DNA of 64,000 nucleotides from Haliotis rufescens (Eukaryota). Below are positions 2,719 through 63,305 of the stretch, piece by piece. The notes beneath the pieces were generated by a model. The model was not told the DNA's origin and searched no databases. It saw nothing but the letters and a program-made list of their open reading frames with translations. The stretch covers positions 34,224,001 through 34,288,000 of the forward strand of contig NW_025963835.1 of assembly GCF_023055435.1 (NCBI RefSeq). Reading direction: 5' to 3'. The position numbers and the translations under genes are program-made. Numbering within the stretch: the stretch's first letter is position 1; every line of letters starts with the position of its first letter.

Positions 2719-3448
2719 TGGCAGATAACAATATCGACATGTACTCTTTTCCCACTAGTTTTGTTTTAACAACAGATATCAATCTCCTTTGTCAGAGGAA
2801 AAGGTCAAGGCTCGTCATTGCCGGTTGCTTGAATGTTTAACATTTTAAGCCACCTCATGAGCCCTGGGAGTCAAAATGAAATCTCTGGCTCGTGTTTGTT
2901 CAGTAGATTACCTTCTTGACATGCGGTTGCCCTTGCCGTAAATCCTTCACAAAGCCAACGGGAGAGTAATACCATATGCTGATTGTAACACGGTGTACAG
3001 GAAGCGAGGGTGTGCTTAATTTCACACCCAGGATCACAGTGATTCACCCGGAGGCCTTGAATGATCAGGATCCGAAGTTAATGCACAGCCCTGTCTAATT
3101 CGTCTTGCTGATACACTCTATATGATATTATCGGTGATATTGGATCATTATTAACGAACCTTGAAACTCGCCTGAGGGGATATTTTAGAAATTATCATTC
3201 TACATTATGCTGCAATTCTGTTTCCCCCGTAATCGATATGTAACCGTCGGGACAATGATTTTAGAGGACCCATGCTTCAACAGTCGGGGTGCTATGGTAT
3301 GTTTAATACGTATGGTTTGGGGAAGAGTTATGTTCTCACCATTATTGATTAATATCACTGTTCCAGATCCCATCACTTGGTTTGAACTTAGCGTTAAGTG
3401 TGATATGGCGTTTGCTGGTTCGAATTCCGACATTAACCTAATCCCTGA

Positions 3449-4190
3449 GGGCCATTGTTGGACCATTGTTGTACCATTGTTAGACCATTGTTATACCATT
3501 GTAGGACAATTGTTGGACCATTGTCGTACCATTGCTGTACCATTGTTGTATCATTGTTAGACCATTGTTATACCATTGTAGGACAATTGTTGGACCATTG
3601 TTGGAAAATTGTTGTTACATTGTAGGACAATTGTGGGACAATTGTTGGGCCATTGTTGTACCATTGTTGTACCATTGTTGGACCATAAATGGACCATTGT
3701 TGGACCATTGTTGAACAACCAATGGAGGACCATTGTTGAGACCATTGTTGGACCATTGCTGTACCATTGTTGGGCCTTTGTTGGACCATTGTTGGACCAT
3801 TGTTTGACCATTGCTGGACCATTGTTGGACCATTGTTGAGACCATTGTTGGACCATTGTTGGACTATTGTTGAGACCATTGTTGGACCATTGTTGAGACC
3901 ATTGTTGGACCATTGTTGGACCATTGTTGAGACCATTGTTGGACCATTGATTAAATCATTGTTGGACCATTGTTGAGACCATTGTTGGACCATTGTTGGA
4001 CCATTGTTGAGACAATTGTTGGACCATTGTTGAGACCATTGTTGGACCATTTTTGTACCATTGTTGGACCATTGTTGGACCATTGGTGGACCATTGTTAG
4101 GCCATTGTTGGACTATTATTGGTCCATTGTTGAGACCATTGTTAGACCATTGTTGGATTATTGGTGGGCCATTGTTGGACCACTGTTGTG
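3449..4190. repeat. 11-bp minisatellite (GGACCATTGTT)n
   Basis: Direct inspection. Confidence 0.97.
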
Positions 4191-5181
4191 TGGTATCTTC
4201 AAAACACAAAGTCAGTTTACATAGAAGGGGGATGGGGGGATGGGGGGGGGGGGGGGGGGGGGATCTATAGTGCTAGCCCCCGGAGAAACCATGTGGCTGT
4301 TAAACATGAATACCCCACTCAGAAACACTTACTGGCTCCGAGCCGACCAGTCCTAGTTTTAGCCTCTAAACGTATAGCGCTAGACAGGGTAATAACAAGT
4401 ACCATCTATTAACGTATCTTGACATGACGCGGCCGGGGATCAAACCCCGGAACTTCCACTCTCCAGGGCTACCACCAGACCACGGAGGCGGTCAAAGACT
4501 TGTAAATCATCAGCTTCATCGAATACAATACACGTTAGGGGCGGTAGGGTAGCTCAGTTGTACAAGTGTTTGCTCATGATGCCGAGGTCCCGTGTTCGAT
4601 TCCCCAAATGGTGACAATGGGTGAATCCCATTTCTTGTGTCCCCCTGCGCGAAAGTGCTAGAATATTGCTAAAAGCAGCCTAAAACCAAACTCACTCACT
4701 CTCCCAATATACCTAAAAATCTAATCCTATTCAAGTTAACAGATCACATTGTATACTCGTACAAAAAAGATGATAAACCTTGCCGAATTGTTTTCGTTCT
4801 TCAAAATAACAAACGTTCATAAATTCGATATTAAACGACACGGCGACCAGCCTCCAATTCATATTATCTGTAATTCTTGATGAATTAAAACAAAATCAGG
4901 ACATTTTGTTCCTTTCAAACTAAAATCACAATGTGCGTGCCATGAATGAGTCAGTGTTCAATCGAATTGCCTGGCATGTCTCCATCAGATTAAGGCGTGT
5001 TTAGGGAAGGGGAAAAGTGGACATGGATACGGACGTTCACGAAGTTCAATGACTGGGGTGACTAGCAGGTGGTCTTGTGGGCGGGCGTATGTAGCTGCTT
5101 ACAATGTTTCATCGTTTGTCGCGAACAGTCTTATGGTGACTCTGTTTACGGATGTGTCTCTAGGGTTGGGTCGGTGGTCGG

Positions 5182-5455
5182 TTCGTTTTGTGTTTTTGAG
5201 ATTTTCATTTTAGTTTTTGACCTTTTCGTTTTGGTTTTTGACATTTCCATTTTAGTTTTTGACATTTTCACTTCACATTTCAGCGACTCAAAAGCTACTT
5301 AAAAGTACATTTTCTATGTTTTCGGATGTTTTTATACATGATTTATCACATATTTGTATGGCAGATTGTGTTAATTTGCAAAAGGTTAAGATAAAAGTAA
5401 GTTAAACATCAAAATATTGAAAAACAGACTCCATGTCCCTTATGGGGCCACCGTA
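5182..5455. mobile_element. Right arm only of the same foldback MITE
   Basis: Matches 59843-60115; left arm deleted. Confidence 0.8.
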
Positions 5456-6621
5456 GAGACTTGTCATTCTATGGCGGAGACGTTTGATATTTATAATGTT
5501 AATACCTCTGACAATATTAGATCAAAGAGCAAACACAGCAGACACAATATAACTTACAATATCCTCTTTGTGGAAGTGTAAAATCTCTATCCAATCTGAA
5601 ACCAGAACTTCCAGAACCGACAGTTGCAAAACACGATATAAGTACAGCTATTGGGACAGGTGTCATCTACGATTGATTGCTTAGTTTGATTGACATCATG
5701 AGCATTATCTACACGGACAGGACACGATGACAAGCATCAACCAAGTCAGCGAGCCTGACCACCCGACCAATTCTAATCCGGATCTTCTCAGGTATCAACT
5801 ACGGTTGAGTGTATTACACTAGGTTTCAGTGTTAACGAATTAGTTATATTACCCCGTTTTTCCTTAACAATTCATGTGTGACAAAACCCTTTCCATATTC
5901 ATAAGAAATCTCTGATAAAAGCAGTGTACGATTCGGACAATATCATGAATGGGGAACAAGCTGACACATCGTAAATATATTCTGATATAACATTCAAGTA
6001 GAAGTCTGACAGTGTTGCAGTTGTCAAATATTGTCTCAATGCACAGTTCGTAGACAGCAGGCTAATTCAGGATGTTCTGGACCACCAATAACAATTAAAG
6101 GTCCAGAGTAAAGGGTTTCATATTTCAGTCTGATGCATATTGTATACCACTGTATATAATGCTGTTTTGAAATGTGTGTCAACTATTTGATAAATCCGGG
6201 AATACGAAACACCTCCGTAAAATAATGATGACAAGAGTCAATTATGTCAAGATGGTTCAGATATCGTGGATAAAAAGGGGAAAATATGAAACCCACTTTT
6301 TACATTTATAATAAGTCTAATTATAGGCACAGACCCTGATATGTGCTGCTCTTTTGATATTGACTTGTCGCTACGCAGATCCATGTTCTCTCCCACGGTG
6401 TTTTCCTGATGGATTCGGAACACACCCACTTTGCCGTAATTTACAAGAATCGCATCCCATGAAAACTACAAAGCGATTCGGATCATGTCTGATTTTACTG
6501 TCAGAACATTTTGAAAGCCTTTATGAGAGTAAATCTGAATAAAACTAAAAATACATAATTCTTTTCATGAAGACTAATCCTGTGTTGTCAAGGGTAATTA
6601 GTGCATATTCCCAGCCGCGTG

Positions 6622-6787
6622 GGGGCGGTCGGGTAGCCTAGTGGTTAAAGCGTTCGCTCGTCACGCTGAAGACCCGGGTTCGATTACCGACATGGGTACA
6701 ATGTGTGAAGCCCATTTCTGGTGTCCCCCGCCGTAATACTGATCGAATATTGCTAAAAGCGGTGTAAAACCATACTCACTCACTCAC
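6622..6787 (+). mobile_element. tRNA-derived SINE family 1 with (ACTC)n tail
   Basis: A box TAGCCTAGTGG, B box GGTTCGATT, TSD CAGCCGCGTG. Other copies at about 4538, 11660, 22465, 25620, 26069, 35605, 44300, 47433, 47886, 57880, 58720 and 61282. Confidence 0.9.
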
Positions 6788-8177
6788 AGCCGCGTGCATT
6801 GAACACCCACGTGTCTGTCACGTACACATACAGAAGAATGTTACAGGTGGTAACAGATATTTAAATTTTGTCCAATCCCAAAAAGCCGCTCCTCCAGCTC
6901 TCATTTGGTTGAAACATCAACCAGGATACGGGAAGCATACCTTCTCTAAATAGAGGCTTGTGTGGGGGACAATATTTGTTTTCTGAGCAGAACCAAGCAA
7001 TGAGTAGTGTTTCAGTGTGGCATTGACGCTCTTTCGTCACTCACTCACGCACTCACACACGCAGGCACGACATGACATGGCATGACATAACATGATCAAG
7101 TGTCGTGTAGGTGATAAAGGCGTGTTTTTAACCAACGTAGTACATGATAAAGAGGCAGTGGTTGAGATTTATGTTGATCTTTCGCATACTGTCTAATAAC
7201 AAGACTACACACATGTTATATGCCGTGTAATGCTTTTCTTGATGTGAGTTTGTACATGATGTGTTGGCGTGGAATGAAGTGTGGTGTTGGTACAGCGTGT
7301 GCATCGCCTCCTCGGACAGGATCAAGTGTCGGGGCAGTGGAGTGTTTATAACCATCGCAGTCGCTGATAAAAAGGCGGGGTTAAGCGACGGAAGTTAGAC
7401 TAATGTTTATTTGTCGGGTACTGTCTGTCTGTATCCTATTGTCTGCAATTTTTACGGAAATGTTTTAGACATATGACACTGACTAGCTGCCTAACTGACA
7501 TGAATGTTATCGTGGAGATTTTTGAACAGAAGATCTAGGTTTTTGTATCTAACCCTTGAATCAGGGATACGGTATTGTAGAATGCCATCTCTCACCGAAC
7601 AACACTAGTTTGTGAGGTATCTAGGTCATGCGTTACTTTAAGGCATTCATCATTTAACACTCAAACAAATACTGACAACAGCTGTCAAGTGAGATAAGCG
7701 AACGGATCCTTGTTCAATCTGTCGGCAGTGGGACGGAAATATTCCTGTCCGATCAAGATAAATACGCCTTTGCTTTGAATGGAACACAAAAGAGAACACA
7801 ACTATTAGTGAATCATCAAATTTAATGACAATCAAGCAAACAAATAATTCGATGCCGAAAAGTAATTCAAGCCACACATAACAACTGCACTGAGAATACT
7901 CCTATTACAAGACAGTTACAACGTGAACATTGTACACACATATATAAGCATCCTTACTGATTATCAGTCTGGATTTAGGAGTAAATGTTGATGAAAAGAA
8001 ATGACCCATCGTAAATGTATACTGCTATAACAGTCAAGAAGGACAAAGTCTAACATTGTAAGGACCATTAAATTTTTCGGTATTGCTATTGCCGAATATT
8101 GGCTCATGTCACAGTTTGAAGACAGCAAATATTTCAGAGGGACTTCATATGTTAGATTTTCATCTTCATCTTCATCG

Positions 8178-8645
8178 TCAACCACTTGAGGCTCGAGGTG
8201 CAGCACATGTGCACCCAACTGCTACTTCTTTGTCCTCAGGTTGATAGGTGAAGGTACCATTTTCACAGCTGTATTTTAAAACACGGAAGCTAGCTTTCAC
8301 TTGTTCACACTGGTTCTTGTTATTGTTGATACAGTCTCTACAATTACAGCTGGCACTCCGAAGCTGTTGTGGATAAATGTTGTCTCCAAGTCTTAGCGAG
8401 ACGACACTCCAGGGGCAAATGGAACGTTCTCGAGTGGAGTCTTGCATGTTGTTTTGTGACACGGGTGGGTTCGAAGTATCAGGGATGTTGTTCAAGCTGT
8501 TGAAGATCTGTTGTATATGTGATGGTATCTTGCATTGTGTGGCATCCCTTCGTGCTCTCATCATGTTTCCCATATCGTCAGTCACTGGTGTGGCAGTCGC
8601 ATTCATGATGACGACGAGTACGACAGATAACTGTGACAGCTGCAT
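8178..8645 (-). CDS. IL17: Interleukin-17 family cytokine, intronless, 155 aa (type-A flanks)
   Basis: Signal peptide MQLSQLSVVLVVIMNATA, then RSICPW, YPQQL..A.CNC..C, QCEQV...VLK..C and VAVGCTC, which form the IL-17 cystine-knot pattern. Cys replaces the two vertebrate Ser positions, as in invertebrate IL-17s. True ATG taken as 8645 (AACATG context) because the hydrophobic signal peptide starts there and it is the start shared by all copies. Confidence 0.95.
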   Translation of the reverse strand: MQLSQLSVVLVVIMNATATPVTDDMGNMMRARRDATQCKIPSHIQQIFNSLNNIPDTSNPPVSQNNMQDSTRERSICPWSVVSLRLGDNIYPQQLRSASCNCRDCINNNKNQCEQVKASFRVLKYSCENGTFTYQPEDKEVAVGCTCAAPRASSG

Positions 8646-8719: not shown

Positions 8720-8820
8720 TGACTGCTCATCACAAACGACCTCATTTTATAGCAAGTGTGAACCTACACTGCCAAGACGAACGGTCGGGGCTGAAATGGG
8801 AATTCACATTTTGTCCAATC
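8720..8820 (-). promoter_or_regulatory. IL-17 core promoter: Inr-like CAGTC, TATAAAA (8745-8751), kappaB-like GGGAATTCAC (8798-8807), CCAAT (8815-8819)
   Basis: TATA lies about 28 nt upstream of a CAGT initiator-like motif; the motifs are positionally conserved among paralogs. Confidence 0.65.
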
Positions 8821-19332: not shown

Positions 19333-19598
19333 CCACACTTCATTCCACGCCACACTTAATTCCATGCCACTCTTCATTCCACGCCACACTTCATTCGATG
19401 CCACACTTCATTCCACGCCACACTTCATTCCATGCCACTCTTCATTCCATGCCACTCTTCATTCCACGCCACACTTCATTCCACGCCACTCTTCATTCCA
19501 CGCCACTCTTCATTCCACGCCACTCTTCATTCCATGCCACACTTCATTCCACGCCATTCTTCATTCCACGCCACTCTTCACTCCACGCCACTCTTCAT
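19333..19598. repeat. 17-bp minisatellite (CCACACTTCATTCCAYG)n, about 16 units
   Basis: Direct inspection. Confidence 0.95.
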
Positions 19599-20190
19599 TA
19601 CTATTCTATACTAGCAATGGTTGTTGTTGCCTCATATTTAGGGCGTTATGGACAAATAATTGGGACTTAAACTTAAAAGCCGAGTGTAAACCATACCATG
19701 AGATAACAGATTGGTCCACGTGTAGGATATTAATAATCCTAATATACTGATTGCTTTAACGGAAGAAAGCCCATTGTTTATACAAATGGCCTATTTGGAC
19801 AGGTGTTGTTACCTTAAGGGGTTTTACGGACAAATATCGGAACGTTTCAATGATAGACTTCTTTTGTGAAGACATTGAATTTACATTGACATTGAATGGA
19901 CTGTAAAGAACGTTGATCGAAATACTTTACCAAAAGATCTGTTCTCTCAGACGTGTATAAACTGGACAATCATGAATAAATGAAACCAATCCTCTGGTGA
20001 ATGTAAATCACACAGGACACATAACAGCTATCTTTTAATTACACCGAAATATCGTCCTTATTCCATCCAACTTGAAAATGCATGTATGAAATATTGACGA
20101 CATAAAGCAAACGGATGATCCATAATCGATAACTCAGGCTCTAACTTCAACTTAAATGCCAAGTGTAAATCATATCTACTACTAGGTTGT

Positions 20191-29564: not shown

Positions 29565-30892
29565 TCAACTTGGTGAGATCCGACGTTTTGTGATTGTGCA
29601 ACCTACTGCTAATGGTAAGTCCTTGGGTTGACATATGAAGATACTATTTTCACATCTGGTTTCAAAAATAATCATATAAACTAACAACTGTTAGTTAAAC
29701 TTTGAAGGTGAAGGTTTGATGAATATTTGAAGGTGGTTGACACTGTGTAAGATCATGTTGCCAACGTCGAAATCTACTGGTACAATGTCGTCATCTACAG
29801 GCACAAGACGGTCATTTTCTGGCATAGCGTCGACATCAAGTCGTTCAACACCGTCATCTATAGGCACAACGCTGTCATCTACTGGCACAAACGTCGTCCT
29901 CTATGTAACAGCTCCGTCATTTACAGGTACAACGCTGCCATCTGATGATACCAAGCCTTCATCTACATGCACAACATCGTCCTCTACAGGCACAAAGGTA
30001 TAATCTACTGGAACTATATCTATAACTACCACGTCATCTACTGGTACCATACATATATAACTACCACGTCATCTACTGGTACTATGTATATAACTACCAC
30101 GTCATCTACTGGTACTATATATATAACTACCACGTCATCTACTGGTACTATGTATATAACTACCACGTCATCTACTGGTACTATATATATAACTACCACG
30201 TCATCTACTGGAACAACGCTGTCATATACCAAGACAACGCCTTCTGTCATCTACTGGCACAGCGTCGTCCTCTACAGTAACAGCGCCGTCATCTACAGGC
30301 ACAACGCTGTCATCTGAACGTACAACACCTTCGTCTACAGGCACAACACTGTCATCTACTGGTACTATATATATAACTACCACGTCATCTACTGGTACTA
30401 TATATATAACTACCACGTCATCTACTGGTACTATATATATAACTACCACGTCATCTACTGGAACAACGCTGTCATATACCAAGACAACGCCTTCTGTCAT
30501 CTACAGTAACAGCGCCGTCATCTACAGGCACAACGCTGCCATCTGAACGTACAACACCTTCGTCTACAGGCACAACACTGTCATCTACTGGTACTACCTC
30601 ATCATCTACTGGAACAACGCTGTCATATACCAGGACAACGCCTACTGTCATCTACTGGCACAGCGTCGTCCTCTACAGTAACATCACCGTCATCTACAGG
30701 CACAACGCTGCCATCTGAACGTACAAAACCTTCGTATTCAGGCACAACGTCGTCATCTACAGGTACACGGTCGTCATCAACAGGCACAACATCGTCCTCT
30801 GCGGGACCAACGCTGTCATCTACTGGTACTACCAACTCATCTACTAGAACAACGAACGAACATCAACACTACCGATAATCGCACACCTGCAT
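29565..30892 (-). pseudogene. Diverged IL-17 pseudogene with N-terminal 21-bp repeat expansion
   Basis: Minus strand reads MQV-RLSVVL (cf. MQLSQLSVVL), (PVDDDVV)n, PVDFDVGNMI (cf. PVTDDMGNMM), TQCQPPSNIHQTF (cf. TQCQIPSHIQQIF) and CENSIFICQPKDLPLAVGCTITKRRISPS* (cf. CENGTFTYQPEDKEVAVGCTCAAPRASSG*). It carries frameshifts and internal deletions. Confidence 0.85.
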
Positions 30893-31310
30893 GTTCCTCA
30901 ATAGAACAAGGACATCTAACGCTGCATTGTGTATTTTATAATATTTCAGTGATAAATAATGTTGGGGAATTATAATTGCGTTAAACGTTTCGTTTTACTT
31001 GATAAATGAATTCATGATTGCATGACACTCAGAGAAATATTTTATTGCAATATGCATTTGTACAACTCTGCTTTACATTATCGAATTCTCCACTATCAGA
31101 TGTGATGGTAATTCTTAATGATAGAGTATCAGTGATAATGGCTTTCCTATAACAGTTACATTGTACGTCCTAATGGAGGAGAAATTAGCGTGTGAGTGTG
31201 TCAGTTTTATTCGGTATAACGCCTATTTGAACACTGATAGAGAATTATTTGATCACTGATAGTCCGTGCACAAAGTGCCTTGCATTATTTCCACAGTAAC
31301 TATTTCCTAT

Positions 31311-32126
31311 TCACAAAGAGAGAAATATCTTCCATAACAAATTTTGTTTAAAAGAAGATAAATTATATGGTATGTATGAACAGGCGCATATGTACACAGG
31401 TGTGGTTGTACACAGGTGTAGTTGTACACATGTGCAGTTGTACACAGGTTCAGTTGTACACAGGTCCATTTGTACACGTGTGGTTGTACACAGGTGCATT
31501 TGTACACAGGTGCATTTGTACACAGGTGCATTTGTACACATGTGTGGTTGTACACAGGTGCATTTGTACCCATGTGTGGTTGTACACATGTGCAGTTGTA
31601 CACATGTGTGGTTGTACACAGGTGTGATTGTACACAGGTGCAGTTGTACACAGGTGCAGTTGTACACAGGTGTGGTTGTACACAGATGCAGTTGTACACA
31701 GGTGCAGTTGTACACAGGTGTTGTTGTACACAGGTTTAGTTGTACACAGCTGTATTTCAAAACACGGAAGCTAGCTTTCACTTGTTCACACTGGTTCTGG
31801 ATATTGTTGATACAGTCTGTACAATTACAGCTGGCACTCCGAAGCTGTTGTGGATAAATGTTGTCTCCAAGTCTTAGCGAGACGAAGCTCCAGGGGCAAA
31901 TGGAACGTTCTCGAGTGGAGTCTTGCATGTTGTTTGGTGACACGGGTGAGTTCGAAGTATCAGGGATGTTGTTCAAGCTGTTGAAGATCTGTTGTATATG
32001 TGATGGTATCTGGCATTGTGTGGCATCCCTTCGTGCTCGCATCATGTTTCCCATATCGTCAGTCACTGGTGTGGCAGTCGCATTCATGATGACGACGAGT
32101 ACTACATATAACTGTGACAGCTGCAT
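31311..32126 (-). CDS. Chimeric ORF: IL-17 residues 1-127 fused in frame to a minisatellite-encoded Cys/Thr-rich tail (271 aa); may be a pseudogene
   Basis: IL-17 homology ends at 31745 (...VLKYSC) and the frame stays open through the TGTACACAGGTGCAGTT array to a stop at 31311. Promoter and TATA are retained. Confidence 0.7.
   Translation of the reverse strand: MQLSQLYVVLVVIMNATATPVTDDMGNMMRARRDATQCQIPSHIQQIFNSLNNIPDTSNSPVSPNNMQDSTRERSICPWSFVSLRLGDNIYPQQLRSASCNCTDCINNIQNQCEQVKASFRVLKYSCVQLNLCTTTPVYNCTCVQLHLCTTTPVYNCTCVQLHLCTITPVYNHTCVQLHMCTTTHGYKCTCVQPHMCTNAPVYKCTCVQMHLCTTTRVQMDLCTTEPVYNCTCVQLHLCTTTPVYICACSYIPYNLSSFKQNLLWKIFLSL
31388..31749. repeat. 17-bp minisatellite (TGTACACAGGTGCAGTT)n, about 21 units
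   Basis: Direct inspection. Confidence 0.97.
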
Positions 32127-33198
32127 GTTCGTTGACAAAACTTTTGTAATCAACTTAAAATAGTGACTTCTGAGCATCTGTCAGTCGAGAGTTTCTGGTG
32201 TGACTGCTCATCACAAACGACCTCATTTTATAGCAAGTGTGAACCTACACTGCCAAGACGAACGGTCGGGGCTGAAATGGGTATTCACATTTTGTCCAAT
32301 CCCAAAACTATAGTGTTGAATTTGAGAATGACTCTAACAAATGTCTGGGGGCAGAAATAACTATTCCGGGTGTGAAATGTTCGTCATCTCCATCTCAAAA
32401 CCCCATCTCTGCCTCCTACTCCTCCTACAATTTTACATTTATCAAGATTTGTCAGGTGATGTTCAAATGTTCATGGGTATTTATTTCTTCCCTATCGAGC
32501 TTGTTCCGGTTGTAAGAGGATAATAGCTAGTCAAGTTTTCTTTCTTGACTTCCTGCTTGAAGAGAACACATTTTTGCTTGAGTAACTTCGAAGAAGTATA
32601 CCGAATGGTTTAATATGATAGTTGTTCACAAGCAAAATTCTTTACAACAGTGTACACATTTTCGGAAAGATGTTCTAATGACAAATTAGGGATAACAAAT
32701 CATGTTTCACTGTAGCTAACTTAAGATAATTGTGCACTCTTGTTAAGCGCCAACTCAGGAAATATCTTCCTTTGTGAGTGACAATATTCAAGCAACTTTA
32801 CTGAAGCCTATGAAAATCTGCGCTTTGGTTCGAATATATTGCCTACAGTTCAGCCTGAGTTAAATTCTTAATATTAGAAACAGGACATGTGCATAAGTAA
32901 TCAAATGTTGCGATCTACAGCAAATGTTCAACGTTCAACACCAGTACGTCTTTGTGAGTGTGATGATTACTGACATCCATGCATAATGACCACTTCACCA
33001 CCGGATATATATTGTTCCTTCTCGTCCTGAGATTCTCATTACGAAGTACATGTCTGTCAGACATGCAATTGTGGTCATGAGTGCATAACGATACGGTGCA
33101 GGATTCAAACTATTGTTCAGCTAACTCTATTTTTGTGTTGACTGACAGCCTGGGTTCTTTCAAAACGTATTGACATTTGAGTCCTTTCAAAACCGACA

Positions 33199-41676: not shown

Positions 41677-41980
41677 TAGTCTGGAAGTTAATTTAAGGTA
41701 CCGACGTTTACTACAATATCTGAAAAACTATTCGACCTACTCCAGTCAAAGATAGTATGAGATTATGAAACAGTCATACATAACTGGATATTATATTTAA
41801 AGACAATCGATGCATGAATAAAAAATCTGTCTATTTAGCTATCACTATATTTCATCAACAACCAGACCTGTTCGTCACGGGTGGAACGAGCATTCATTGT
41901 AACAGCTATCTGCATAATGCTACCCCTGCGTCACAGGGTCATATGACACAGTTGAACCAATCAACTCAACTCGAAAGGTT
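41677..41980. mobile_element. Left TIR of the same Sailor-like element (body deleted)
   Basis: Reverse complement of about 16090-16393; begins TA|TAGTCTGGAAGTTAATTTAAGG. Confidence 0.8.
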
Positions 41981-43101
41981 CCATGCCACACTTCATTCCA
42001 CGCCACACTTCATTCCATGCCACACTTCATTCCATGCCACACTTCATTCCATGCCACACTTCATTTCACGCCATTCTTCATTCCACGCCACACTTCATTC
42101 CATGCCACCCTTCCTTCCACGCCACTCTTTATTCCACGCCACTCTTCATTCCACGCCTCTCTTCATTCCATGCCACTCTTCATTCCACGCCAATCTTCAT
42201 TCCAAGCCACTCTTCATTCCATGCCACACTTCATTCCACGACACACTTCATTCCACGCCACACTTCATTCCATGCCACACTTCATTCCACGCCACACTTC
42301 AATCGATGCCACACTTCATTACATGTCACACTTCATTCCATGCCACACTTCATTCCACGCCGCACTTCATTCCATGCCACACTTCATTCCACGCCATTCT
42401 TCATTTCACGCCATTCTTCATTCCATGCCTCTCTTCATTCCACGCCATTCTTCATTCCACGCCTCTCTTCATTCCACGCCACTCTTCATTCCATGCCACA
42501 CTTCATTCCACGCCACACTTCATTCCACGCCACTCTTCATTCCATGCCACTCTTCATTCCATGCCACACTTCATTCCACGCCACACTTCATTCCACGCCA
42601 CTCTTCATTCCATGCCACACTTCATTCCATGCCACACTTCATTCCATGCCACACTTCATTACATGTCACACTTCATTCCATGCCACACTTCATTCCACGC
42701 CACACTTCATTCCATGCCACACTTCATTCCACGCCATTCTTCATTCCACGCCATTCTTCATTCCATGCCTCTCTTCATTCCATGCCACACTTCATTCCAC
42801 GCCACTCTTCATTCCACGCCACTCTTCATTCCATGCCACACTTCATTCCACGCCACACTTCATTCCACGCCACACTTCATTCCATGCCACTCTTCATTCC
42901 ATGCCACACTTCATTCCACGCCACACTTCATTCCACGCCATTCTTCATTCCATGCCACTCTTCATTCCATGCCACACTTCATTCCACGCCACACTTCATT
43001 CCACGCCACTCTTCATTCCATGCCACACTTCATTCCGCGCCACACTTCATTCCACGCCATTCTTCATTCCACGCCACTCTTAATTCCACGCCACTCTTCA
43101 T
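41980..43101. repeat. 17-bp minisatellite (CCACACTTCATTCCAYG)n, about 66 units, followed by (TATAC)n to about 43192
   Basis: Direct inspection. Confidence 0.97.
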
Positions 43102-43674
43102 TACTATACTATACTATACTATACTATATTATACTATACTATACTATACTATACTATACTATACTATACTATACTATACTATACTATACTATCAATGGTT
43201 GTTGTTGCCTCATATTAATAATCCTAATATACTGATTGCTTTAACGGAGGAAAGCCCATTGTTTATACAAATGGCCTATTTGGACAGGTGTTGTTACCTT
43301 AAGGGTTTTACGGACAAATATCGGAACGATTCAATGATAGACTTCTTTTGTGAAGACATTGAATTTACATTGACATTGAATGGACTGTAAAGAACGTTGA
43401 TCGAAATACTTTACGAAAAGATCTGTTCTCTCAGACGTGTATAAACTGGACAATCATGAATAAATGAAACCCATCCTCTGGTAAATGTAAATCACACAGG
43501 ACACATAACAGCTGTCTTTTAATTACACCGAAATATCGTCCTTGTTCCATCCAACTTGAAAATGCATGTATGGAATATTGACGACATAAAGCAAACGGAT
43601 GATCCATAATCTATAACTCAGGCTCTAACTTCAACTTAAATGCGAAGTGTAAATCATATCTACTACTAGGTTGT

Positions 43675-53796: not shown

Positions 53797-55735
53797 ATAT
53801 GTACACAGGTGTGGTTCTACACATGTGCAGTTGTACACAGGTGCAGTTGTACACTGGTGCAGTTGTACACAGGTGCAATTGTACACAGGTGTGGTTGTAC
53901 ACAAGTGGGTTTGTACAGAGGTGCAGTTGTACACAGAGGCTGTTCTACACTGGTGCAATTGCACACAGGTGCAGTTGTACACTGGTGCAGTTGTACACAT
54001 GTGCAGTTGTACACAGGTGCAGTTGTACACTGACGCAGTTGTACACAGGTGTGGTTGTACACAGGTGTGGTTGTACACAGGTACAGTTTTACACAGGTGC
54101 GGGTGTACACAGGTGTGGTTGTACACAGGTGCAGTTGTACACAGGTGCGGTTGTACACAGGTGCAGTTGTACACAGGTGTGGTTGTACACAGGTACTGTT
54201 GAACACAGAGGCAGTTCTACGCAGGTGCAATTGTACACAGTTGTGGTTGTACAGAGGTGCAGTTGTACACACGCGCAGTTGTACACAGGTGCAGTTGTAC
54301 ACTGGTGCAGTTGTACACAGGTGCAGTTGTACACATGTGCAGTTGTACACATGTGCAGTTGTACACATGTGCAGTTGTACACAGGTGCAGTTGTACACAG
54401 GTGCAGTTGTAAACAGGTGCAGTTGTACACAGATGCTGTTGTACACAGGTGTGGTTATACACAGGTACTGTTTTGCACAGACGCAGTTCTACACAGGTGT
54501 AATTGTACAAAGGTGTGGTTGTACACAGGTGCAGTTGTACATAGACGCAGCTGTACACAGATGCAGTTGTACACAGGTGCAGTTGTACACAGATGCTGTT
54601 GTACACATATGCAGTTGTACACAGATGCAGTTGTACATTGGTGCAGTTGTACACAAATGCATTTGTATACAGGTGCAGATCTACATAGGTTGGGTTGTAC
54701 ACAGGCGCAGTTGTACACATGTGCAGTTGTACACAGGTGCAGTTGTACACAGGTGTGGCTGTACACAAGTGGGTTTGTACAGAGGTGCAGTTGTACACTG
54801 GTGCAGTTGTACACAGGTGGGGTTGTACACGAGTGGGGTTGTACAGAGGTGCAGTTGTGCACATGTGCAGTTGTACACTGGTGCAGTTGTACACAGGTGC
54901 AGTTGTACACTGGTGCAGTTGTACATAGGTGCAGTTGTACACAGGTGGGGTTGTACACAAATGGGGTTGTACAGAGGTGCAGTTGTGCACATGTGCAGTT
55001 GTACACTGGTGCAGTTGTACGAAGGTGCAGTTGTACACAGGTGCAGTTGTACACAGATGCAGTTGTACACTGGTGCAGTTGTACACATGTGCAGTTGTAC
55101 ACAGGTGCAGTTGTACACAGATGCAGTTGTACACAGGTGCAGTTGTACACATGTGCAGTTGTACACATGTGCAGTTGTACACATGTGCAGTTGTACACAT
55201 GTGCAGTTGTAAACAGGTGCAGTTGTACACAGATGCTGTTGTACACAGGTGTGGTTATACACAGGTACTGTTTTGCACAGACGCAGTTCTACACAGGTGT
55301 AATTGTACACAGGTGTGGTTGTACACAGGTGCAGTTGTACACAGGTGGGGTTGTACACAAGTGGGTTTGTACAGAGGTGCAGTTGTACACTGGTGCAGTT
55401 GTACACAGTGCAGTTGTACACAGGTGGGGTTGTACACAAGTGGGGTTGTACACAGGTGCAGTTGTGCACATGTGCAGTTGTACACTGGTGCAGTTGTACG
55501 AAGGTGCAGTTGTACACAGGTGCAGTTGTACACAGATGCAGTTGTACACTGGTGCAGTTGTACACATGTGCAGTTGTACACATGTGCAGTTGTACACAGA
55601 TGCATTTGTGCACAGGTGCATTTGTACACTGTTGCAGTTGTACACTGGTGCAGTTGTACACTGGTGCAGTTGTACACAGGTGCAGTTGTACACAGGTGCA
55701 GTTGTACACAGATGTGGTTGTAAACAGACGCAGTG
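53797..55735. repeat. 17-bp minisatellite (TGTACACAGGTGCAGTT)n, more than 110 units
   Basis: Direct inspection. Confidence 0.97.
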
Positions 55736-56460
55736 ACAGATAACGATATCGGCTTGTACTCTTTTCCCCTCTAATTTTGTTTTAACAAAAGATATCAATC
55801 TCCTTTGTCAGAGGAAAAGGTCAAGGTTGCCGGTTGCTTGAATGTTGAACTATTTCAGCCACCTCACATGAGCCCTGGGAGCTTCCATGAAATCTCTGGC
55901 TCTTGTTTGTTCAGTAGATTACCTTCTTGACATGCGGTTGCCCTTGCCGTAAATCCTTCACAAAGCCAAAGGGAGAGTAATACCAAATGCTGATTGTAAC
56001 ACGGTGTACAGAACGTGAGGGTATGCTTTATTTCAGATCCAGGATCACGGTGATTCACCCGGAGGCCTTGAATGATCCGGATCCGAAGTTAATGCACAGC
56101 CCTGTCTAATTCGTGTTACTGATACACACTATATGATATTATCGGGGATATTGGATCATTATTAACGAACCTTGAAACTCGCCTGAGGGGGGTATTTTAG
56201 AAATTATCATTCTACATTATGCGGCAATTCTGTTTCCCCCGTAATCGATATATAACTATCGGGACAATGATTTTAGAGGACCCATGCTTCAACAGTCGGG
56301 GTGCTATGGTATGTTCAATACGTATGGTTTGGGGAAGAATTATGTTCTCACCATTATTGATTAATATCCCTATTCCAGATCCCATTGTTTGATTGGAACT
56401 TAGCGTTAAGTGTGATATGGCGTTTGCTGGTTCGAATTCCGACATTAACCTTATCGCTGA

Positions 56461-57722
56461 GGGCCATTGTTGGACCATTGTTGGACCATTGTTGTACCAT
56501 TGTTGTACCATTGATAGACCATTGTTATACCATTGTAGGATCATTGTTGTACCATTGTTGTACCATTGTTCGACCATTGCTGTACCATTGTTGGACCATT
56601 CTTGTACCATTGTTGGGCCATTGTTGGACCATTGTTGAGACCATTGTTGGACCATTGTTGTACCATTGTTGTACCATTGTTGTACCATTGTTGGGCCATT
56701 GTTGGACCATTGTTGGACCACTGTTGAGACCATTGTTGGACCATTGTTTGACCATTGGTGGACCATTGCTGTGCCATTGTTGGACAATTGTTGGACCATT
56801 GTTGCAACCATTGTCGTACCATTGCTGTACCATTGTTGTATCATTGTTGTATCATTGTTATACCATTGTAGGACAATTGTTGGACCATTGTTGGACCATT
56901 GTTGGACCATTGTTGAGACCATTGTTGAGACCATTGTTGGACCATTGTTGGACCATTGTTGGACCATTGTTGAGAGCATTGTTCGACCATTGCTGTACCA
57001 TTGTTGGACCATTGTTGTACCATTGTTGGGCCATTGTTGGACCATTGTTGAGACCATTGTTGGACCATTGTTGTACCATTGTTGGGCCATTGTTGGACCA
57101 TTGTCGGACCATTGTTGAGACCATTGTTGGACCATTGTTTGACCATTGTTGGAACATTGTAGGACAATTGTTGGACCATTGTTGCAACCATTATAGTACC
57201 ATTGCTATACCATTGTTGTATCATTGTTACCCCATTGTTATACCATTGTAGGACAATTGTTGGACCATTGTTGGACCATTGTTGAGACCATTGTTGGACC
57301 ATTGTTGGACCATTGTTGGGTCATTGTTGTACCATTGTTGTACCATTGTTGGACCATTAATGGACCATTGTCGGACCATTGTTGGACCATTGGTGGACCA
57401 TTGCTGTGCCATTGTTGGGCCATTGTTGCACCATTGTTGAGACCATTGTTGAGACCATTGTTGGACCATTGTTGGACAATTGTTGTGATTTTTTTTGGAC
57501 CATTGTTGGACCATTGTTGAGACCATTGTTGGACCATTGTTGAGACCATTGTTAGACCATTGTTAGACCATTGTTGTTCCATTGTTGGGCCATTGTTGAG
57601 ACCATTGTTTTTCCATTGATGGACCAATGTTGGGCTATTGTTGGACCATTATTGGTCCATTGTTGAGAGCATTGTTAGACCATTGTTGGACCATTGGTGG
57701 ACCATTGTTGGACCACTGTTGT
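56461..57722. repeat. 11-bp minisatellite (GGACCATTGTT)n
   Basis: Direct inspection; paralog of 3449-4190. Confidence 0.97.
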
Positions 57723-59536
57723 GTGGTATCTTCAAAACACAATGTCAGTTTACATAGAAGGGGTTTCTAGATGTCAAGATGTTGTTGCACTGTGTTCACA
57801 GAAGTCGCTTTTGTTACTTGAGCGTTTTATTCTTAAATAGTTTGATTCCACTGGAATTCTTTACCCAGTACTGTGTGTGTGAGTAAGTTAGTTTTACGGC
57901 GCTTTTAGTAGTATGTCAGCAATATCACGGCGGGGACACCAGAAGTAGGCTTCAAGACTGTATCTAAGTTGAGTATCGCGTGACGCACGAACGCATTAAG
58001 CTACCACATCGTTATATAGAACATGCCGTTATAGAACATGCCATTAAAGAACATGCCGACATGTGTCAAACCTGCACAGGTAACTCTACATGCCTTGAGA
58101 AAGGTGTGATATATACTCAACGTCATTATTGAAGCGACACCTAGGAATGGTTGTCAAACATGAACATGTGCAAAAAACATTAACAAAAATATGGAACAAT
58201 AATAGCAACAGAACAATCGTTATGATAGAACAATAATGGCAACTAAACAACAGTTACAATACTACTATAATTACTGTTGAACAATAGGTGCATCACTGGA
58301 TTATATATCATACTCACTGTTCTTCTCTGGTGGTGAATTAGATTAACGAGCGACTATTCTTTCATAACTGTATTGTCGATTTACACTATTTACGATGGGA
58401 ATAGCATGTTTTAGCATGAGTGTGTAAGGGGAAGGAGGAGGGGGATTTATTGTGCTAGCCCCCGGAGAAACCATGCGGCTGTTAAACATGAATACCCCAC
58501 TCAGAAACACTTACTGGCTCCGAGCCGACCAGTCCTAGTTTTAGCCTCTAAACGCATAGCGCTAGACAGGGTAATAACAAGTACCATCTATTAACGTATC
58601 TTGGCATGACGCGGCCGGGGATCAAACCCCGGAACTTCCACTCTCCAGGGCTACCACCAGACCACGGAGGCGGTCAAAGACTTGTAAATCATCTGCTACA
58701 TCGAATACAATACACGTTAGGGGCGGTAGGGTAGCTCAGTTGTACAAGTGTTTGCTCATGATGCCGAGGTCCCGTGTTCGATTCCCCAAATGGTGACAAT
58801 GTGTGAATCCCATTTCTTGTGTGCCCCTGCGCGAAAGTGCTAGAATATTGCTAAAAGCAGCGTCAAACCAAACTCACTCACTCTCCCAATATACTTAAAA
58901 ATCTAATCCTATTCAAGTTAACAGATCACATTGTATACTCGTACAAAAAAGATGATAAACCTTGCCGAATTGTTTTCGTTCTTCAAAATAACAAACGTTC
59001 AAAAATTCGATATTAAACGACACGGCGACCAGCCTCTAATTCATATTATCTGTAATTCTTGCTGAATTAAAACAAAATCAGGACATTTTGTTCCTTTCAA
59101 ACTAAAATCCCAATGTGCGTGCCATGAATGAGTCAGTGTTCAATCGAATTGCCTGGCATGTCTCCATCAGATTAAGGCGTGTTTAGGGAAGGGGAAAAGT
59201 GGACGTGGATACGGACGTTCACGAAGTTCAATGACTGGGGTGACTAGCAGGTGGTCTTGTGGGCGGGCGTATGTAGCTGCTTACAATGTTTCATCGTTTG
59301 TCGCGAACAGTCTTATGGTGACTTTGTTTACGGATGTGTCTCTAGGGTTGGGTCGGTGGTCGAAAAGATAATAGAAACAAAATTACACAAATGTTTTAAA
59401 GTGATGAATATTGTCTACCAGTTCAGCACCGTCTATTTATCATCTTCACGAACACCTGGTGCCCTCACTTATTTTCAGTGATCTATTCATAAACATAAAC
59501 GACCAATGGAAGTTGTTTCGGCGGGTAGCGGAGACT

Positions 59537-60115
59537 TACGGTGGCCCATAAGGGACATGGAGTCTGTTTTTCCATATTTTGATATTTCACTTACATTTAT
59601 CGTAACCTTTTGCAAATAAACACGATGTCTTACAAATATGTGATAAATCATGTGTAAAGAAGATATTGAATCGCTGAAAAACGAAACGAAAATGTCAAAA
59701 ACTAAAATGAAAATGTCAAAAACACAAAACGAAAATGTCAAAAACTAAAAAGAAAATACAGAAAACTATTTCAACCGCGGTGTAAATATTATCACCGCGG
59801 TGGAAATAGTTTTCCGTGTATTCATTTCAGTTTTTGACATTTTCGTTTTGTGTTTTTGAGATTTTCATTTTAGTTTTTGACCTTTTCGTTTTGGTTTTTG
59901 ACATTTCCATTTTAGTTTTTGACATTTTCACTTCACATTTCAGCGACTCAAAAGCTACTTAAAAGTACATTTTCTATGTTTTCGGATGTTTTTATACATG
60001 ATTTATCACATATTTGTATGGCAGATTGTGTTAATTTGCAAAAGGTTAAGATAAAAGTAAGTTAAACATCAAAATATTGAAAAACAGACTCCATGTCCCT
60101 TATGGGGCCACCGTA
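59537..60115. mobile_element. Foldback MITE, TIR TACGGTGGCCC..., 6-bp TSD GAGACT, internal about 21-bp subrepeats
   Basis: Whole element is an imperfect palindrome centred near 59788; TSD at 59531-59536 and 60116-60121. Confidence 0.85.
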
Positions 60116-62837
60116 GAGACTTGTCATTCTATGGCGGAGACGTTTGATATTTATAATGTTAATACCTCTGACAATATTAGATCAAAGAGCAAACACAGCA
60201 GACACAATATAACTTACAATATCCTCTTTGTGGAAGTGTAAAATCTCTATCCAATCTGAAACCAGAACTTCCAGAACCGACAGTTGCAAAACACGATATA
60301 AGTACAGCTATTGGGACAGGTGTCATCTACGATTGATTGCTTAGTTTGATTGACATCATGAGCATTATCTACACGGACAGGACACGATGACAAGCATCAA
60401 CCAAGTCAGCGAGCCTGACCACCCGACCAATTCTAATCCGGATCTTCTCAGGTATCAACTACGGTTGAGTGTATTACACTAGGTTTCAGTGTTAACGAAT
60501 TAGTTATATTACCCCGTTTTTCCTTAACAATTCATGTGTGACAAAACCCTTTCCATATTCATAAGAAATCTCTGATAAAAGCAGTGTACGATTCGGACAA
60601 TATCATGAATGGGGAACAAGCTGACACATCGTAAATATATTCTGATATAACATTCAAGTAGAAGTCTGACAGTGTTGCAGTTGTCAAATATTGTCTCAAT
60701 GCACAGTTCGTAGACAGCAGGCTAATTCAGGATGTTCTGGACCACCAATAACAATTAAAGGTCCAGAGTAAAGGGTTTCATATTTCAGTCTGATGCATAT
60801 TGTATACCACTGTATATAATGCTGTTTTGAAATGTGTGTCAACTATTTGATAAATCCGGGAATACGAAACACCTCCGTAAAATAATGATGACAAGAGTCA
60901 ATTATGTCAAGATGGTTCAGATATCGTGGATAAAAAGGGGAAAATATGAAACCCACTTTTTACATTTATAATAAGTCTAATTATAGGCACAGACCCTGAT
61001 ATGTGCTGCTCTTTTGATATTGACTTGTCGCTACGCAGATCCATGTTCTCTCCCACGGTGTTTTCCTGATGGATTCGGAACACACCCACTTTGCCGTAAT
61101 TTACAAGAATCGCATCCCATGAAAACTACAAAGCGATTCGGATCATGTCTGATTTTAGTGTCAGAACATTTTGAAAGCCTTTATGAGAGTAAATCTGAAT
61201 AAAACTGAAAATACATAATTCTTTTCATGAAGACTAATCCTGTGTTGTCAAGGGTAATTAGTGCATATTCCCAGCCGCGTGGGGGCGGTCGGGTAGCCTA
61301 GTGGTTAAAGCGTTCGCTCGTCACGCTGAAGACCCGGGTTCGATTCCCGACATGGGTACAATGTGTGAAGCCCATTTCTGGTGTCCCCGCCGTAATACTG
61401 ATCGAATATTGCTAAAAGCGGTGTAAAACCATACTCACTCACTCACAGCCGCGTGCATTGAACACCCACGTGTCTGTCACGTACACATACAGAAGAATGT
61501 TACAGGTGGTAACAGATATTTAAATTTTGTCCAATCCCAAAAAGCCGCTCCTCCAGCTCTCATTTGGTTGAAACATCAACCAGGATAAGGGAAGCATACC
61601 TTCTCCAAATAGAGGCTTGTGTGGGGGACAATATTTGTTTTCTGAGCAGAACCAAGCAATGAGTAGTGTTTCAGTGTGGCATTGACGCTCTTTCGTCACT
61701 CACTCACGCACTCACACACGCAGGCACGACATGACATGGCATGACATAACATGATCAATTAAGTGTCGTGTAGGTGATAAAGGCGTGTTTTTAACCAAAG
61801 TAGTACATGATAAAGAGGCAGTGGTTGAGATTTATGTTGATCTTTCGCATACTGTCTAATAAGACTACACACATGTTATATGCCGTGTAATGCTTTTCTT
61901 GATGTGAGTTTCTACATGATGTGTTGGCTAGGAATGAAGTGTGGTGTTGGTACAGCGTGTGCATCGCCTCCTCGGACAGGATCAAGTGTCGGGGCAGTGG
62001 AGTGTTTATAACCATCGCAGTCGCTGATAAAAAGGCGGGGTTAAGCGACGGAAGTTAGACTAATGTTTATTTGTCGGGTACTGTCTGTCTGTATCCTATT
62101 GTCTGCAATTTTTACGGAAATGTTTTAGACATATGACACTGACTAGCTGTCAAACTGACATGAATGTTATCGTGGAGATTTTTGAACAGAAGATCTAGGT
62201 TTTTGTATCTAACCCTTGAATCAGGGATACGGTATTGTAGAATGCCATCTCTCACCGAACAACACTAGTTTGTGAGGTATCTAGGTCATGCGTTACTTTA
62301 AGGCATTCATCATTTAACACTCAAACAAATACTGACAACAGCTGTCAAGTGAGATAAGCGAACGGATCCTTGTTCAATCTGTCGGCAGTGGGACGGAAAT
62401 ATTCCTGTCCGATCAAGATAAATACGCCTTTGCTTTGAATTGAACACAAAAGAGAACACAACTATTTGTGAATCATCAAATTTAATGACAATCAAGCAAA
62501 CAAATAATTCGATGCCGAAAAGTAATTCAAGCCACACATAACAACTGCACTGAGAATACTCCTATTATAAGACAGTTACAACGTGAACATTGTACACACA
62601 TATATAAGCATCCTTACTGATTATCAGTCTGGATTTAGGAGTAAATGTTGATGCAAAGAAATGACCCATCGTAAATGTATACTGCTATAACAGTCAAGAA
62701 GGACAAAGTCTAACATTGTAAGGACCATTAAATTTTTCGGTATTGCTATTGCCGAATATTGGCTCACGTCACAGTTTGAAGACAGCAAATATTTCAGAGG
62801 GACTTCATATGTTAGATTTTCATCTTCATCTTCATCG

Positions 62838-63305
62838 TCAACCACTTGAGGCTCGAGGTGCAGCACATGTGCACCCAACTGCTACTTCTTTGTCCTCAGG
62901 TTGATAGGTGAAGGTACCATTTTCACAGCTGTATTTTAAAACACGGAAGCTAGCTTTCACTTGTTCACACTGGTTCTTGTTATTGTTGATACAGTCTCTA
63001 CAATTACAGCTGGCACTCCGAAGCTGTTGTGGATAAATGTTGTCTCCAAGTCTTAGCGAGACGACACTCCAGGGGCAAATGGAACGTTCTCGAGTGGAGT
63101 CTTGCATGTTCTTTTGTGACACGGGTGAGTTCGAAGTATCAGGGATGTTGTTCAAGCTGTTGAAGATCTGTTGTATATGTGATGGTATCTTGCATTGCGT
63201 GGCATCCCTTCGTGCTCTCATCATGTTTCCCATATCGTCAGTCACTGGTGTGGCAGTCGCATTCATGATGACGACGAGTACGACAGATAACTGTGACAGC
63301 TGCAT
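62838..63305 (-). CDS. IL17: Interleukin-17 family cytokine, 155 aa (type-A flanks)
   Basis: Same motifs; near-identical to 8178-8645. Confidence 0.95.
   Translation of the reverse strand: MQLSQLSVVLVVIMNATATPVTDDMGNMMRARRDATQCKIPSHIQQIFNSLNNIPDTSNSPVSQKNMQDSTRERSICPWSVVSLRLGDNIYPQQLRSASCNCRDCINNNKNQCEQVKASFRVLKYSCENGTFTYQPEDKEVAVGCTCAAPRASSG

What the first reader, a model, noticed from the sequence alone, without database searches (positions are those of the whole stretch)
31311..32126. IL-17::minisatellite fusion ORF in which the satellite resupplies the lost Cys-Thr-Cys motif
A deletion of about 5.5-7 kb (relative to units I and III) joined the IL-17 CDS at ...VLKYSC to the 17-bp satellite through CACAG microhomology (31745-31749). 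The frame stays open for 144 more codons. The native end is YSC-17aa-CTC (VAVGCTC); the fusion reads YSC-13aa-CTC (PVYNCTC), followed by about 7 Cys/His/Thr-rich 17-aa repeats. Promoter, TATA and signal peptide are intact, so a secreted IL-17 with a VNTR-encoded tail of variable length is possible. It could be a decoy, a dominant negative or simply non-functional. The CxC resupply may be coincidence.
Basis: partly seen in the sequence, partly recalled or inferred. Interest (0 to 1): 0.82.

Follow-up and report, generated by a model that had tools for sequence, protein, structure and literature searches.

The report
Truncated IL-17 gene reading into satellite
One copy in a large tandem family of invertebrate IL-17 cytokine genes lost its last strand to a real 5.5-7 kb deletion and now reads into a repeat that has no stop codons in any frame, so the long "fusion" protein and its Cys-Thr-Cys motif are most likely by-products of a young pseudogene.

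Summary
ORF 31311-32126 (-) joins IL-17 codons 1-127 (…VLKYSC) to a satellite at CACAG (31745-31749). The 5.5 kb (unit I) or 7.2 kb (unit III) found in the sister units is missing. A perfect 83-bp short-read contig from run X1 crosses the junction, so a misassembly is unlikely.

Corrections: the repeat is 16 bp and 16 aa, not 17.

- The satellite consensus has no stop in any of six frames. All three frames of a strand encode the same cyclic peptide, VQLHLCTTAPVYNCTC. An open frame and a CTC every 16 residues therefore follow from any join.
- The Cys-to-CxC spacing is 13. It is 17 in 24 of 29 IL-17 paralogs of this genome and never 13.
- Adding the first repeat lowers the Pfam IL17 score from 26.9 to 22.2 bits. 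The native protein scores 45.5.
- AlphaFold gives the tail pLDDT below 50 and weakens the core.
- The one RNA-like contig found is the unit I type. No matching protein is on record.
- At least 48 IL-17 domain loci make this copy redundant.

Best reading: a recent microhomology-mediated deletion made a pseudogene, possibly polymorphic, in a birth-and-death array. First-stage notes on this same window (s1-811251, s1-811252) read the array the same way.

The parts
31311..32126 (-). Fusion ORF: 271 codons plus stop, counted from the ATG shared by all paralogs. An upstream in-frame ATG at 32175-32177 would give 288 aa.
31746..32126 (-). IL-17-derived part, codons 1-127. It holds the signal-peptide-like N-terminus, the CPW motif and the CNCTDC strand-2 cysteines, and ends ...VLKYSC. 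The last strand (beta4) and its invariant CxC are missing.
   Evidence: Pfam IL17 26.9 bits over profile positions 1-46 of 81
31745..31749 (.). Deletion junction: CACAG microhomology shared by the satellite unit and the native CDS.
   Evidence: alignment A1; perfect 83-bp contig 31692-31774 in run X1
31380..31749 (.). 16-bp satellite array, 23.2 copies, consensus ACAGGTGCAGTTGTAC. It is read on the minus strand as about 7.3 copies of VQLHLCTTxPVYNCTC.
31311..31379 (-). Non-repeat end of the ORF (…SYIPYNLSSFKQNLLWKIFLSL) and its stop codon, in the satellite's left flank.
31206..31211 (-). AATAAA hexamer 100 nt downstream of the stop, a possible cryptic poly(A) signal. Such hexamers occur about once per kb per strand in this window.
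32226..32232 (-). TATAAAA box about 100 nt upstream of the shared ATG, identical in five paralogs.
8178..8645 (-). Intact sister gene of unit I (155 aa plus stop). It is the reference for the lost 3' end.
62838..63305 (-). Intact sister gene of unit III (155 aa plus stop). It is the only copy whose exact product is in the public protein collection.
2720..8263 (.). Unit I equivalent of the segment deleted in unit II. It holds the last 86 bp of the CDS, the 3' flank and an 11-bp satellite. No ORF of 90 aa or more lies outside satellite.
55728..62923 (.). Unit III equivalent of the deleted segment (7.2 kb).

Best explanation
Unit II's IL-17 gene is a young truncated copy. It is in effect a pseudogene inside a tandem birth-and-death array of near-identical IL-17 genes.

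A single deletion of about 5.5-7 kb ran from inside an unstable 16-bp satellite to codon 127 of the gene. It was resolved at a 5-bp microhomology (CACAG), as in microhomology-mediated end joining or replication slippage. It removed the last beta-strand with the two invariant knot cysteines, the stop codon and the native 3' end.

The satellite unit has no stop in any frame and encodes the same 16-aa peptide in every frame. Translation would therefore run on for 144 codons and meet a CTC every 16 residues whatever the join.

The promoter is intact, so transcription is possible. The product lacks a native IL-17 fold and carries 21 extra cysteines. It is expected to be misfolded and inert.

Shown: the deletion, the junction, the stop-free satellite, the loss of the family signature and the redundancy. 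Inferred: the repair mechanism, the lack of function and a possible presence/absence polymorphism.
For: - Junction and deletion.
- Junction-specific 83-bp contig at single-copy depth in X1.
- Seven intact paralogs within about 80 kb all keep ENGTFTYQPEDKEVAVGCTC, so the intact state is ancestral.
- The genome has at least 48 PF06083 matches.
- The satellite is stop-free in six frames, the same peptide is encoded in all three frames of a strand, and the 1.9-kb sister array has only 2-4 stops per minus frame (about one per 215 codons). That gives roughly a 57% chance of no stop over 123 codons.
- Other satellites here also give long spurious ORFs, for example 213 aa in the 11-bp satellite.
- Pfam IL17 scores: native 45.5 bits, IL-17 part alone 26.9, with the first repeat 22.2, whole fusion no hit.
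- Cys-to-CxC spacing is 17 in 24 of 29 paralogs, 11 in 4, and never 13.
- AlphaFold2: native core pLDDT 83-91 with a long beta3-beta4 hairpin. Fusion core 62-77, substitute strand 41-44, tail below 50.
- Foldseek best IL-17 hit: E 4e-6 for native against 0.018 for the fusion.
- Private changes in unit II are 4 nonsynonymous to 1 synonymous.
- The exact product is absent from 15 billion proteins, and no relative carries such a tail.
- The only RNA-like contig on the stretch is the unit I type.
Against: - The promoter, TATA box, start codon and signal-like N-terminus are intact, and an AATAAA follows the stop. Expression cannot be excluded.
- The IL-17 part has no stop or frameshift.
- The low-confidence AlphaFold model still ranks IL-17 structures first.
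- RNA evidence is very thin. Only one guessed-RNA run, held as contigs, could be laid, and the 4:1 substitution count is too small to show relaxed constraint.
- The absence of the junction in X5 and X14 contigs proves nothing.
Confidence: 0.8

Rival explanations
1. The fusion is an expressed, secreted neomorphic protein. It would be an IL-17 N-terminal two-thirds with a Cys/Thr-rich tail of variable length, acting as a decoy, a dominant negative (by pairing with native IL-17) or something new. The first satellite CTC would close the knot.
For: - Intact promoter, TATA box and start.
- Open frame of 271 codons.
- CTC 13 residues after YSC.
- AATAAA 100 nt after the stop.
- The low-confidence model still resembles IL-17 most.
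- Other IL-17 genes of this genome carry repeat-encoded extensions at the N-terminal end, for example L034.
Against: - Every feature cited follows automatically from the satellite's sequence.
- The spacing of 13 is unseen in the family.
- The Pfam score drops when the repeat is added.
- The tail and the substitute strand are at pLDDT below 50 despite a favourable alignment.
- There are 21 extra cysteines.
- No fusion-type transcript contig and no recorded product were found.
- Redundancy is massive.
Confidence: 0.07
2. The junction is an assembly artefact, a misjoin or collapse in a repeat-rich tandem array, and the real gene is intact.
For: - The region consists of three 92-99% similar units full of satellites.
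- In X5 the only contig over 31754-31814 carries unit II's private letters at 31801 and 31819 but continues into the native 3' end.
- X14 shows no contig over the junction.
Against: - An 83-bp contig built independently from short reads of X1 matches 31692-31774 without a mismatch, at depth 19, which is like single-copy neighbours. It ends exactly 30 bases into the shared sequence, as a junction-specific branch of a k=31 graph should.
- The join is at a 5-bp microhomology between unrelated sequences, not inside a repeat shared by both sides.
- X1 may be the assembled individual, but it is a different data type.
Confidence: 0.03
3. The locus is transcribed from the intact promoter, but what matters is the RNA, a satellite-containing non-coding transcript or a source of small RNA, not the protein.
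For: The promoter is intact and faces a satellite that also forms arrays on other contigs, C18, C346 and C35.
Against: No transcript evidence was found. Nothing distinguishes this reading from transcriptional noise.
Confidence: 0.05

Closest known systems
Invertebrate IL-17 family (Pfam PF06083) in tandemly expanded arrays of marine invertebrates
   Same: The intact sister genes match PF06083 over positions 1-80 of 81. They have the invertebrate CPW motif and 6-8 conserved cysteines, fold like IL-17A/F and sit in tandem arrays, as described for mussels, scallops, octopus and sea urchins (PMC8353272, PMC4517768, PMC5457136).
   Different: The fusion copy has lost beta4 and the invariant CxC. 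As a whole protein it fails the family model, and it carries a 144-aa satellite-encoded tail not seen in any relative.
Truncated pseudogenes left by birth-and-death evolution of immune gene clusters
   Same: It is one damaged copy among many near-identical intact ones. Further IL-17 debris lies in the same window: 5' relics at 550-627 and 49134-49211, and 3' relics at 29574-29669 and 52086-52181. The paralogs also share mosaic variants, which suggests gene conversion.
   Different: The reading frame does not end at the break. It runs on for 144 codons because the joined satellite has no stops, so the copy looks like a gene.
Microhomology-mediated deletions (alt-EJ or replication slippage) at unstable minisatellites
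   Same: The junction has a 5-bp microhomology with one end inside a tandem array. That array's copy number differs widely between units: 5.7, 23 and 121 copies.
   Different: The mechanism is inferred from the junction sequence alone. No repair intermediates or population data are available.
Proteins with minisatellite (VNTR)-encoded domains, such as mucin tandem-repeat regions (from general knowledge)
   Same: A tandem DNA repeat would be translated into a peptide repeat whose number could vary between alleles.
   Different: In mucins the repeat period is a multiple of three and the repeat is a conserved, selected domain. Here the period is 16 bp, the peptide arises only because the unit is stop-free, and there is no sign of selection or expression.

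Membership tests
IL-17 (Pfam PF06083) | Score above the curated Pfam gathering cut-off (24 bits) over the whole domain | tested here: not met
   The whole fusion has no IL17 hit even at E<=10. The IL-17 part alone scores 26.9 bits but covers only profile positions 1-46 of 81. With the first repeat it scores 22.2 bits. The native copies score 45.5 bits over 1-80 of 81.
IL-17 (Pfam PF06083) | Four knot cysteines: two on strand 2 and a CxC on strand 4 (PMC4517768; Hymowitz 2001 as cited there) | tested here: not met
   The strand-2 cysteines are kept (CNCTDC). The native CxC (C145/C147, invariant in alignment A3) is deleted. The satellite CTC lies at spacing 13, against 17 in 24 of 29 paralogs.
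IL-17 (Pfam PF06083) | Invertebrate CPW motif and N-terminal secretion signal | tested here: met
   SICPW is kept, and the N-terminus MQLSQLYVVLVVIMNATA differs from its sisters only by S to Y. No signal-peptide predictor was available, so secretion itself is not tested.
IL-17 (Pfam PF06083) | IL-17 fold with a long beta3-beta4 hairpin | tested here: inconclusive
   The native model has E108-128 and E131-148 at pLDDT 87-90 and hits IL-17A/F at E 4e-6. The fusion model has mean pLDDT 49, its substitute strand 135-143 is at about 41-44, and its best IL-17 hit is E 0.018.
Expressed gene (as opposed to pseudogene) | Transcripts that span the junction | tested here: inconclusive
   The one guessed-RNA run with any words (X20) gave a single 174-bp contig. 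Its four differences match unit I, not unit II. Only contigs were available and only one laying call was allowed.
Microhomology-mediated deletion | Short identical sequence at both breakpoints, with one copy kept | tested here: met
   CACAG is present in the satellite unit and in the native CDS, and occurs once at the junction.

The most novel reading that the evidence does not exclude
The fusion allele is transcribed from its intact immune-inducible promoter and secreted. It would be a polymorphic IL-17 variant whose cysteine-rich, VNTR-length tail lets it cross-link or sequester native IL-17 or its receptor. That would be a naturally occurring, length-variable cytokine antagonist born from a satellite.
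Probability: 0.04. Interest if true: 0.75.

Novelty: new member of a known kind. Interest (0 to 1): 0.15.

Why it matters
As it stands, this is an ordinary casualty of birth-and-death evolution in an expanded immune gene cluster. Its main value is as a caution for annotation. Satellites whose unit has no stop codon in any frame produce long ORFs that look like genes, and they keep any gene that a deletion joins to them "open". In this window the 16-bp and 11-bp satellites give ORFs of 130-288 aa.

The locus also gives a clean example of a microhomology junction with one end in an unstable minisatellite. It may be a presence/absence marker in the IL-17 array. Only if junction-spanning transcripts and secreted protein were found would it become an interesting case of a cytokine variant made from a satellite.

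Tried and rejected
- Assembly artefact: rejected because of the perfect junction contig in X1 and the non-repeat nature of the join.
- "Frame kept open by selection": rejected, because the consensus is stop-free in six frames and the sister array has few stops.
- "CTC resupplied": rejected as meaningful, because it occurs in all frames, at the wrong spacing, and adding the repeat lowers the Pfam score.
- Word-based protein searches with the fusion and with the native protein each returned only the unit III protein. I built the alignment for folding from 19 IL-17 paralogs of the same genome instead.
- Exhaustive protein search (search of protein representatives): not run.
- Complex prediction (fusion with native IL-17): not run.
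- Reading X5's 262-bp contig as proof of an intact unit II allele: not accepted. It carries unit II-private letters and a native 3' end, but stretches of 40 and 66 identical bases between paralogs allow a chimeric path in a k=31 graph.
- dN/dS on unit II: only five private changes (4 nonsynonymous, 1 synonymous). One of them (32039) is read differently in X1 and X5, so the count is too small to use.
- The deleted interval was searched for another gene. Only satellite ORFs were found.

Full report
**What is there**

The window (G000 contig C57:34224001-34288000, genome 1.33 Gb) holds three tandem units of an IL-17 gene array.

On the minus strand an ORF runs 31311..32177 (288 aa). Only units I-III have the first ATG. 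All eight close paralogs share a second ATG at 32124-32126, preceded about 100 nt upstream by a conserved TATAAAA (32226-32232).

The sister genes at 8178..8645 and 62838..63305 encode 155-aa proteins. These match Pfam IL17 (PF06083) at 45.5 bits over positions 1-80 of 81. AlphaFold2 folds them with a core pLDDT of 83-91 and a long beta3-beta4 hairpin. Their best PDB matches are human IL-17A and IL-17F (E about 4e-6). They carry the invertebrate CPW motif and the extra cysteines described for invertebrate IL-17s (PMC4517768, PMC8353272).

**The junction**

Alignment of unit II with units I and III (A1) shows identity from CACAG at 31745-31749 rightwards. To the left, units I and III continue with the native codons ...ENGTFTYQPEDKEVAVGCTCAAPRASSG*, while unit II continues with a satellite.

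Self-comparison places the satellite's left flank (30498-31462) opposite 1720-2711 and 53055-53871. The IL-17 gene plus promoter (31745-33198) lies opposite 8264-9701 and 62924-64000. Unit II therefore lacks the equivalent of 2720-8263 (5.5 kb) or 55728-62923 (7.2 kb).

All seven other close paralogs, inside and just outside the window, keep the native 3' end. The intact state is therefore ancestral and unit II carries a deletion. The lost interval holds the last 86 bp of the CDS, the 3' flank and an 11-bp satellite, and no other long ORF. The single copy of CACAG at the join fits microhomology-mediated end joining or replication slippage. That mechanism is inferred.

**Is the junction real?**

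The 121-base junction sequence is unique in the assembly. Contigs that Logan built from short reads of run X1 include an 83-bp contig of depth 19. It matches 31692-31774 without a mismatch and ends exactly 30 bases into the shared sequence, as a junction-specific branch of a k=31 graph would. The native branch is seen as well, as a loose end at 31745.

Its internal 31-mers can still only come from the join. I take the junction as real.

In X5, the only contig over 31754-31814 carries unit II's private letters at 31801 and 31819 but runs on into the native 3' end. X14, labelled as another organism, has no contig there. This may mean that the deletion is polymorphic. However, paralogs share identical stretches of 40 and 66 bases, so a chimeric contig is equally possible. 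It remains unresolved.

**Corrections to the observation**

The satellite period is 16 bp, not 17 (TRF: 31380-31749, 23.2 copies). The peptide repeat is 16 aa, about 7.3 copies, followed by 22 non-repeat residues. The same satellite has 5.7 copies in unit I and 121 in unit III. It also forms arrays on contigs C18, C346 and C35.

**Why the open frame and the CTC are not evidence of function**

- The consensus unit has no stop codon in any of the six frames.
- Because 16 is not a multiple of 3, all three frames of a strand read the same 48-nt super-unit. On the minus strand that is the cyclic peptide VQLHLCTTAPVYNCTC.
- Any deletion that joined a minus-strand gene to this array would therefore gain the same tail, with a CTC every 16 residues. 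With the join at CACAG, the distance to the first CTC is fixed at 13.
- In the actual array, two of the six frames have no stop.
- In the 1.9-kb sister array the minus frames have 2-4 stops in 646 codons. That gives roughly a 57% chance that 123 codons stay open without selection.
- For a random 370-nt stretch of this window the chance is 4%. The excess comes from the repeat itself.
- The 11-bp satellite nearby likewise yields a 213-aa ORF.

**Does the tail replace the lost strand?**

- In 29 IL-17 ORFs taken from this genome, the distance from the preceding Cys to the CxC is 17 in 24, 11 in a separate subgroup of 4, and 32 in one that lost the Cys. It is never 13.
- Pfam IL17 gives 26.9 bits for the IL-17 part alone (profile 1-46). 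It gives 22.2 bits when the first repeat is added and aligned to profile 47-80, and nothing for the whole fusion. In the native protein that half adds 18.6 bits.
- MAFFT aligned the first satellite CTC onto the family's CxC, so AlphaFold2 was given the most favourable alignment. Even so, the substitute strand (135-143) has pLDDT about 41-44 and the rest of the tail is below 50. The core falls from 83-91 to 62-77, with mean pLDDT 49.3 and pTM 0.28.
- Foldseek still ranks IL-17 structures first for the fusion model, but only at E 0.018.
- The tail adds 21 cysteines to the 7 that remain in the IL-17 part.
- From established knowledge of the IL-17F and IL-17A structures (1JPY and others, listed), strand 4 carries half of the knot and is part of the hairpin that forms the dimer. 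A correctly folded product is therefore unlikely. The models do not report Cys-Cys distances, so disulfide formation itself could not be checked.

**Expression and annotation**

The promoter-proximal 120 nt, the TATA box and the start codon are intact. An AATAAA lies 100 nt after the stop, but such hexamers occur about once per kb.

No listed holder of the stretch is on record as RNA. The one guessed-RNA run of the species with any words (X20) gave one 174-bp contig. Its four differences from unit II are exactly unit I's letters.

Neither the 271-aa nor the 288-aa product is among 15 billion recorded proteins. The unit III protein is. A search with the fusion found no protein with a similar tail. 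This is weak negative evidence only.

**Context**

The genome has at least 48 matches to PF06083, about 25 of them on C57 between 34.09 and 34.64 Mb. Eight near-identical copies lie within about 80 kb. IL-17 fragments lie in the same window. The paralogs share mosaic variants. Units I and III are 99.3% identical over 4.2 kb, while unit II is 92-96% identical to either.

This is the tandem, lineage-specific expansion reported for marine invertebrates (PMC8353272, PMC5457136), with the usual debris. Unit II's IL-17 part has four private nonsynonymous changes (S to Y, Q to P, R to T, N/T to I) and one private synonymous change. That is compatible with relaxed constraint but far too few changes to show it.

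**Verdict**

The interpretation as a possibly functional IL-17 with a resupplied knot motif is not supported.

The best explanation (about 0.8) is a recent microhomology-mediated deletion that truncated one redundant IL-17 copy. A stop-free satellite then extended its ORF by accident.

Rivals:
- An expressed neomorphic or antagonist protein: about 0.07.
- A functional satellite-containing RNA: about 0.05.
- A misassembly: about 0.03.

**Steps not run**

- A complex prediction, because I make no binding claim.
- Any further laying of reads, because the cap is one call.

Noticed in passing
L034:745-1737 (+) = G000:C57:34177950-34181171: An intact IL-17 paralog of 331 aa. Its N-terminal pro-segment is about 200 aa of tandem peptide repeats (…DSLMDFG.AMTRR…). 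Repeat-encoded extensions therefore do occur in apparently complete IL-17 genes of this genome, but at the N-terminal end.
   Followed up: no
window 5182-9339 vs 59842-64000: Units I and III are 99.3% identical over 4.2 kb, while other unit pairs are 92-96% identical. This points to a very recent duplication or gene conversion between the outer units.
   Followed up: no
window 17777-18271 (+), 19328-19599 vs 41979-43102: Unit I holds an inverted intact-looking IL-17 copy that has no counterpart in unit II. Next to the gap, a 17-bp satellite has 16 copies in unit I and 66 in unit II. This is another structural difference that ends at a minisatellite.
   Followed up: partly
window 550-627, 49134-49211, 29574-29669, 52086-52181: IL-17 debris on the minus strand. 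There are two 5' relics (signal-peptide-like VLRSSYFKLIT…) and two 3' relics (…CENSIFICQPKDLPLAVGCT…).
   Followed up: no
window 3452-4188 and 56464-57721: An 11-bp satellite (CCATTGTTGGA) gives ORFs of up to 213 aa (QQWSNNGPTMV repeats). It is another nearly stop-free satellite that mimics a gene.
   Followed up: partly
window 31745-31935 in run X5 (record 21): A 262-bp contig carries unit II's private letters at 31801 and 31819 but continues into the native IL-17 3' end. It is either an intact allele of the unit II gene in that individual or a chimeric contig.
   Followed up: partly
window 32039: The assembly's G, a private synonymous change of unit II, is read as T in the X1 and X5 contigs and as G only in X14, which is labelled as another organism. 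The paralog-specific letters appear to segregate or to be shuffled by conversion.
   Followed up: no
G000:C192:9855-10088, C451:986-1219, C512:860869-861102: Identical or near-identical IL-17 ORFs on three contigs (L011, L012 and L016; likewise L013-L015). They look like uncollapsed haplotigs or very recent duplicates, which would inflate the count of 48 IL-17 loci.
   Followed up: no
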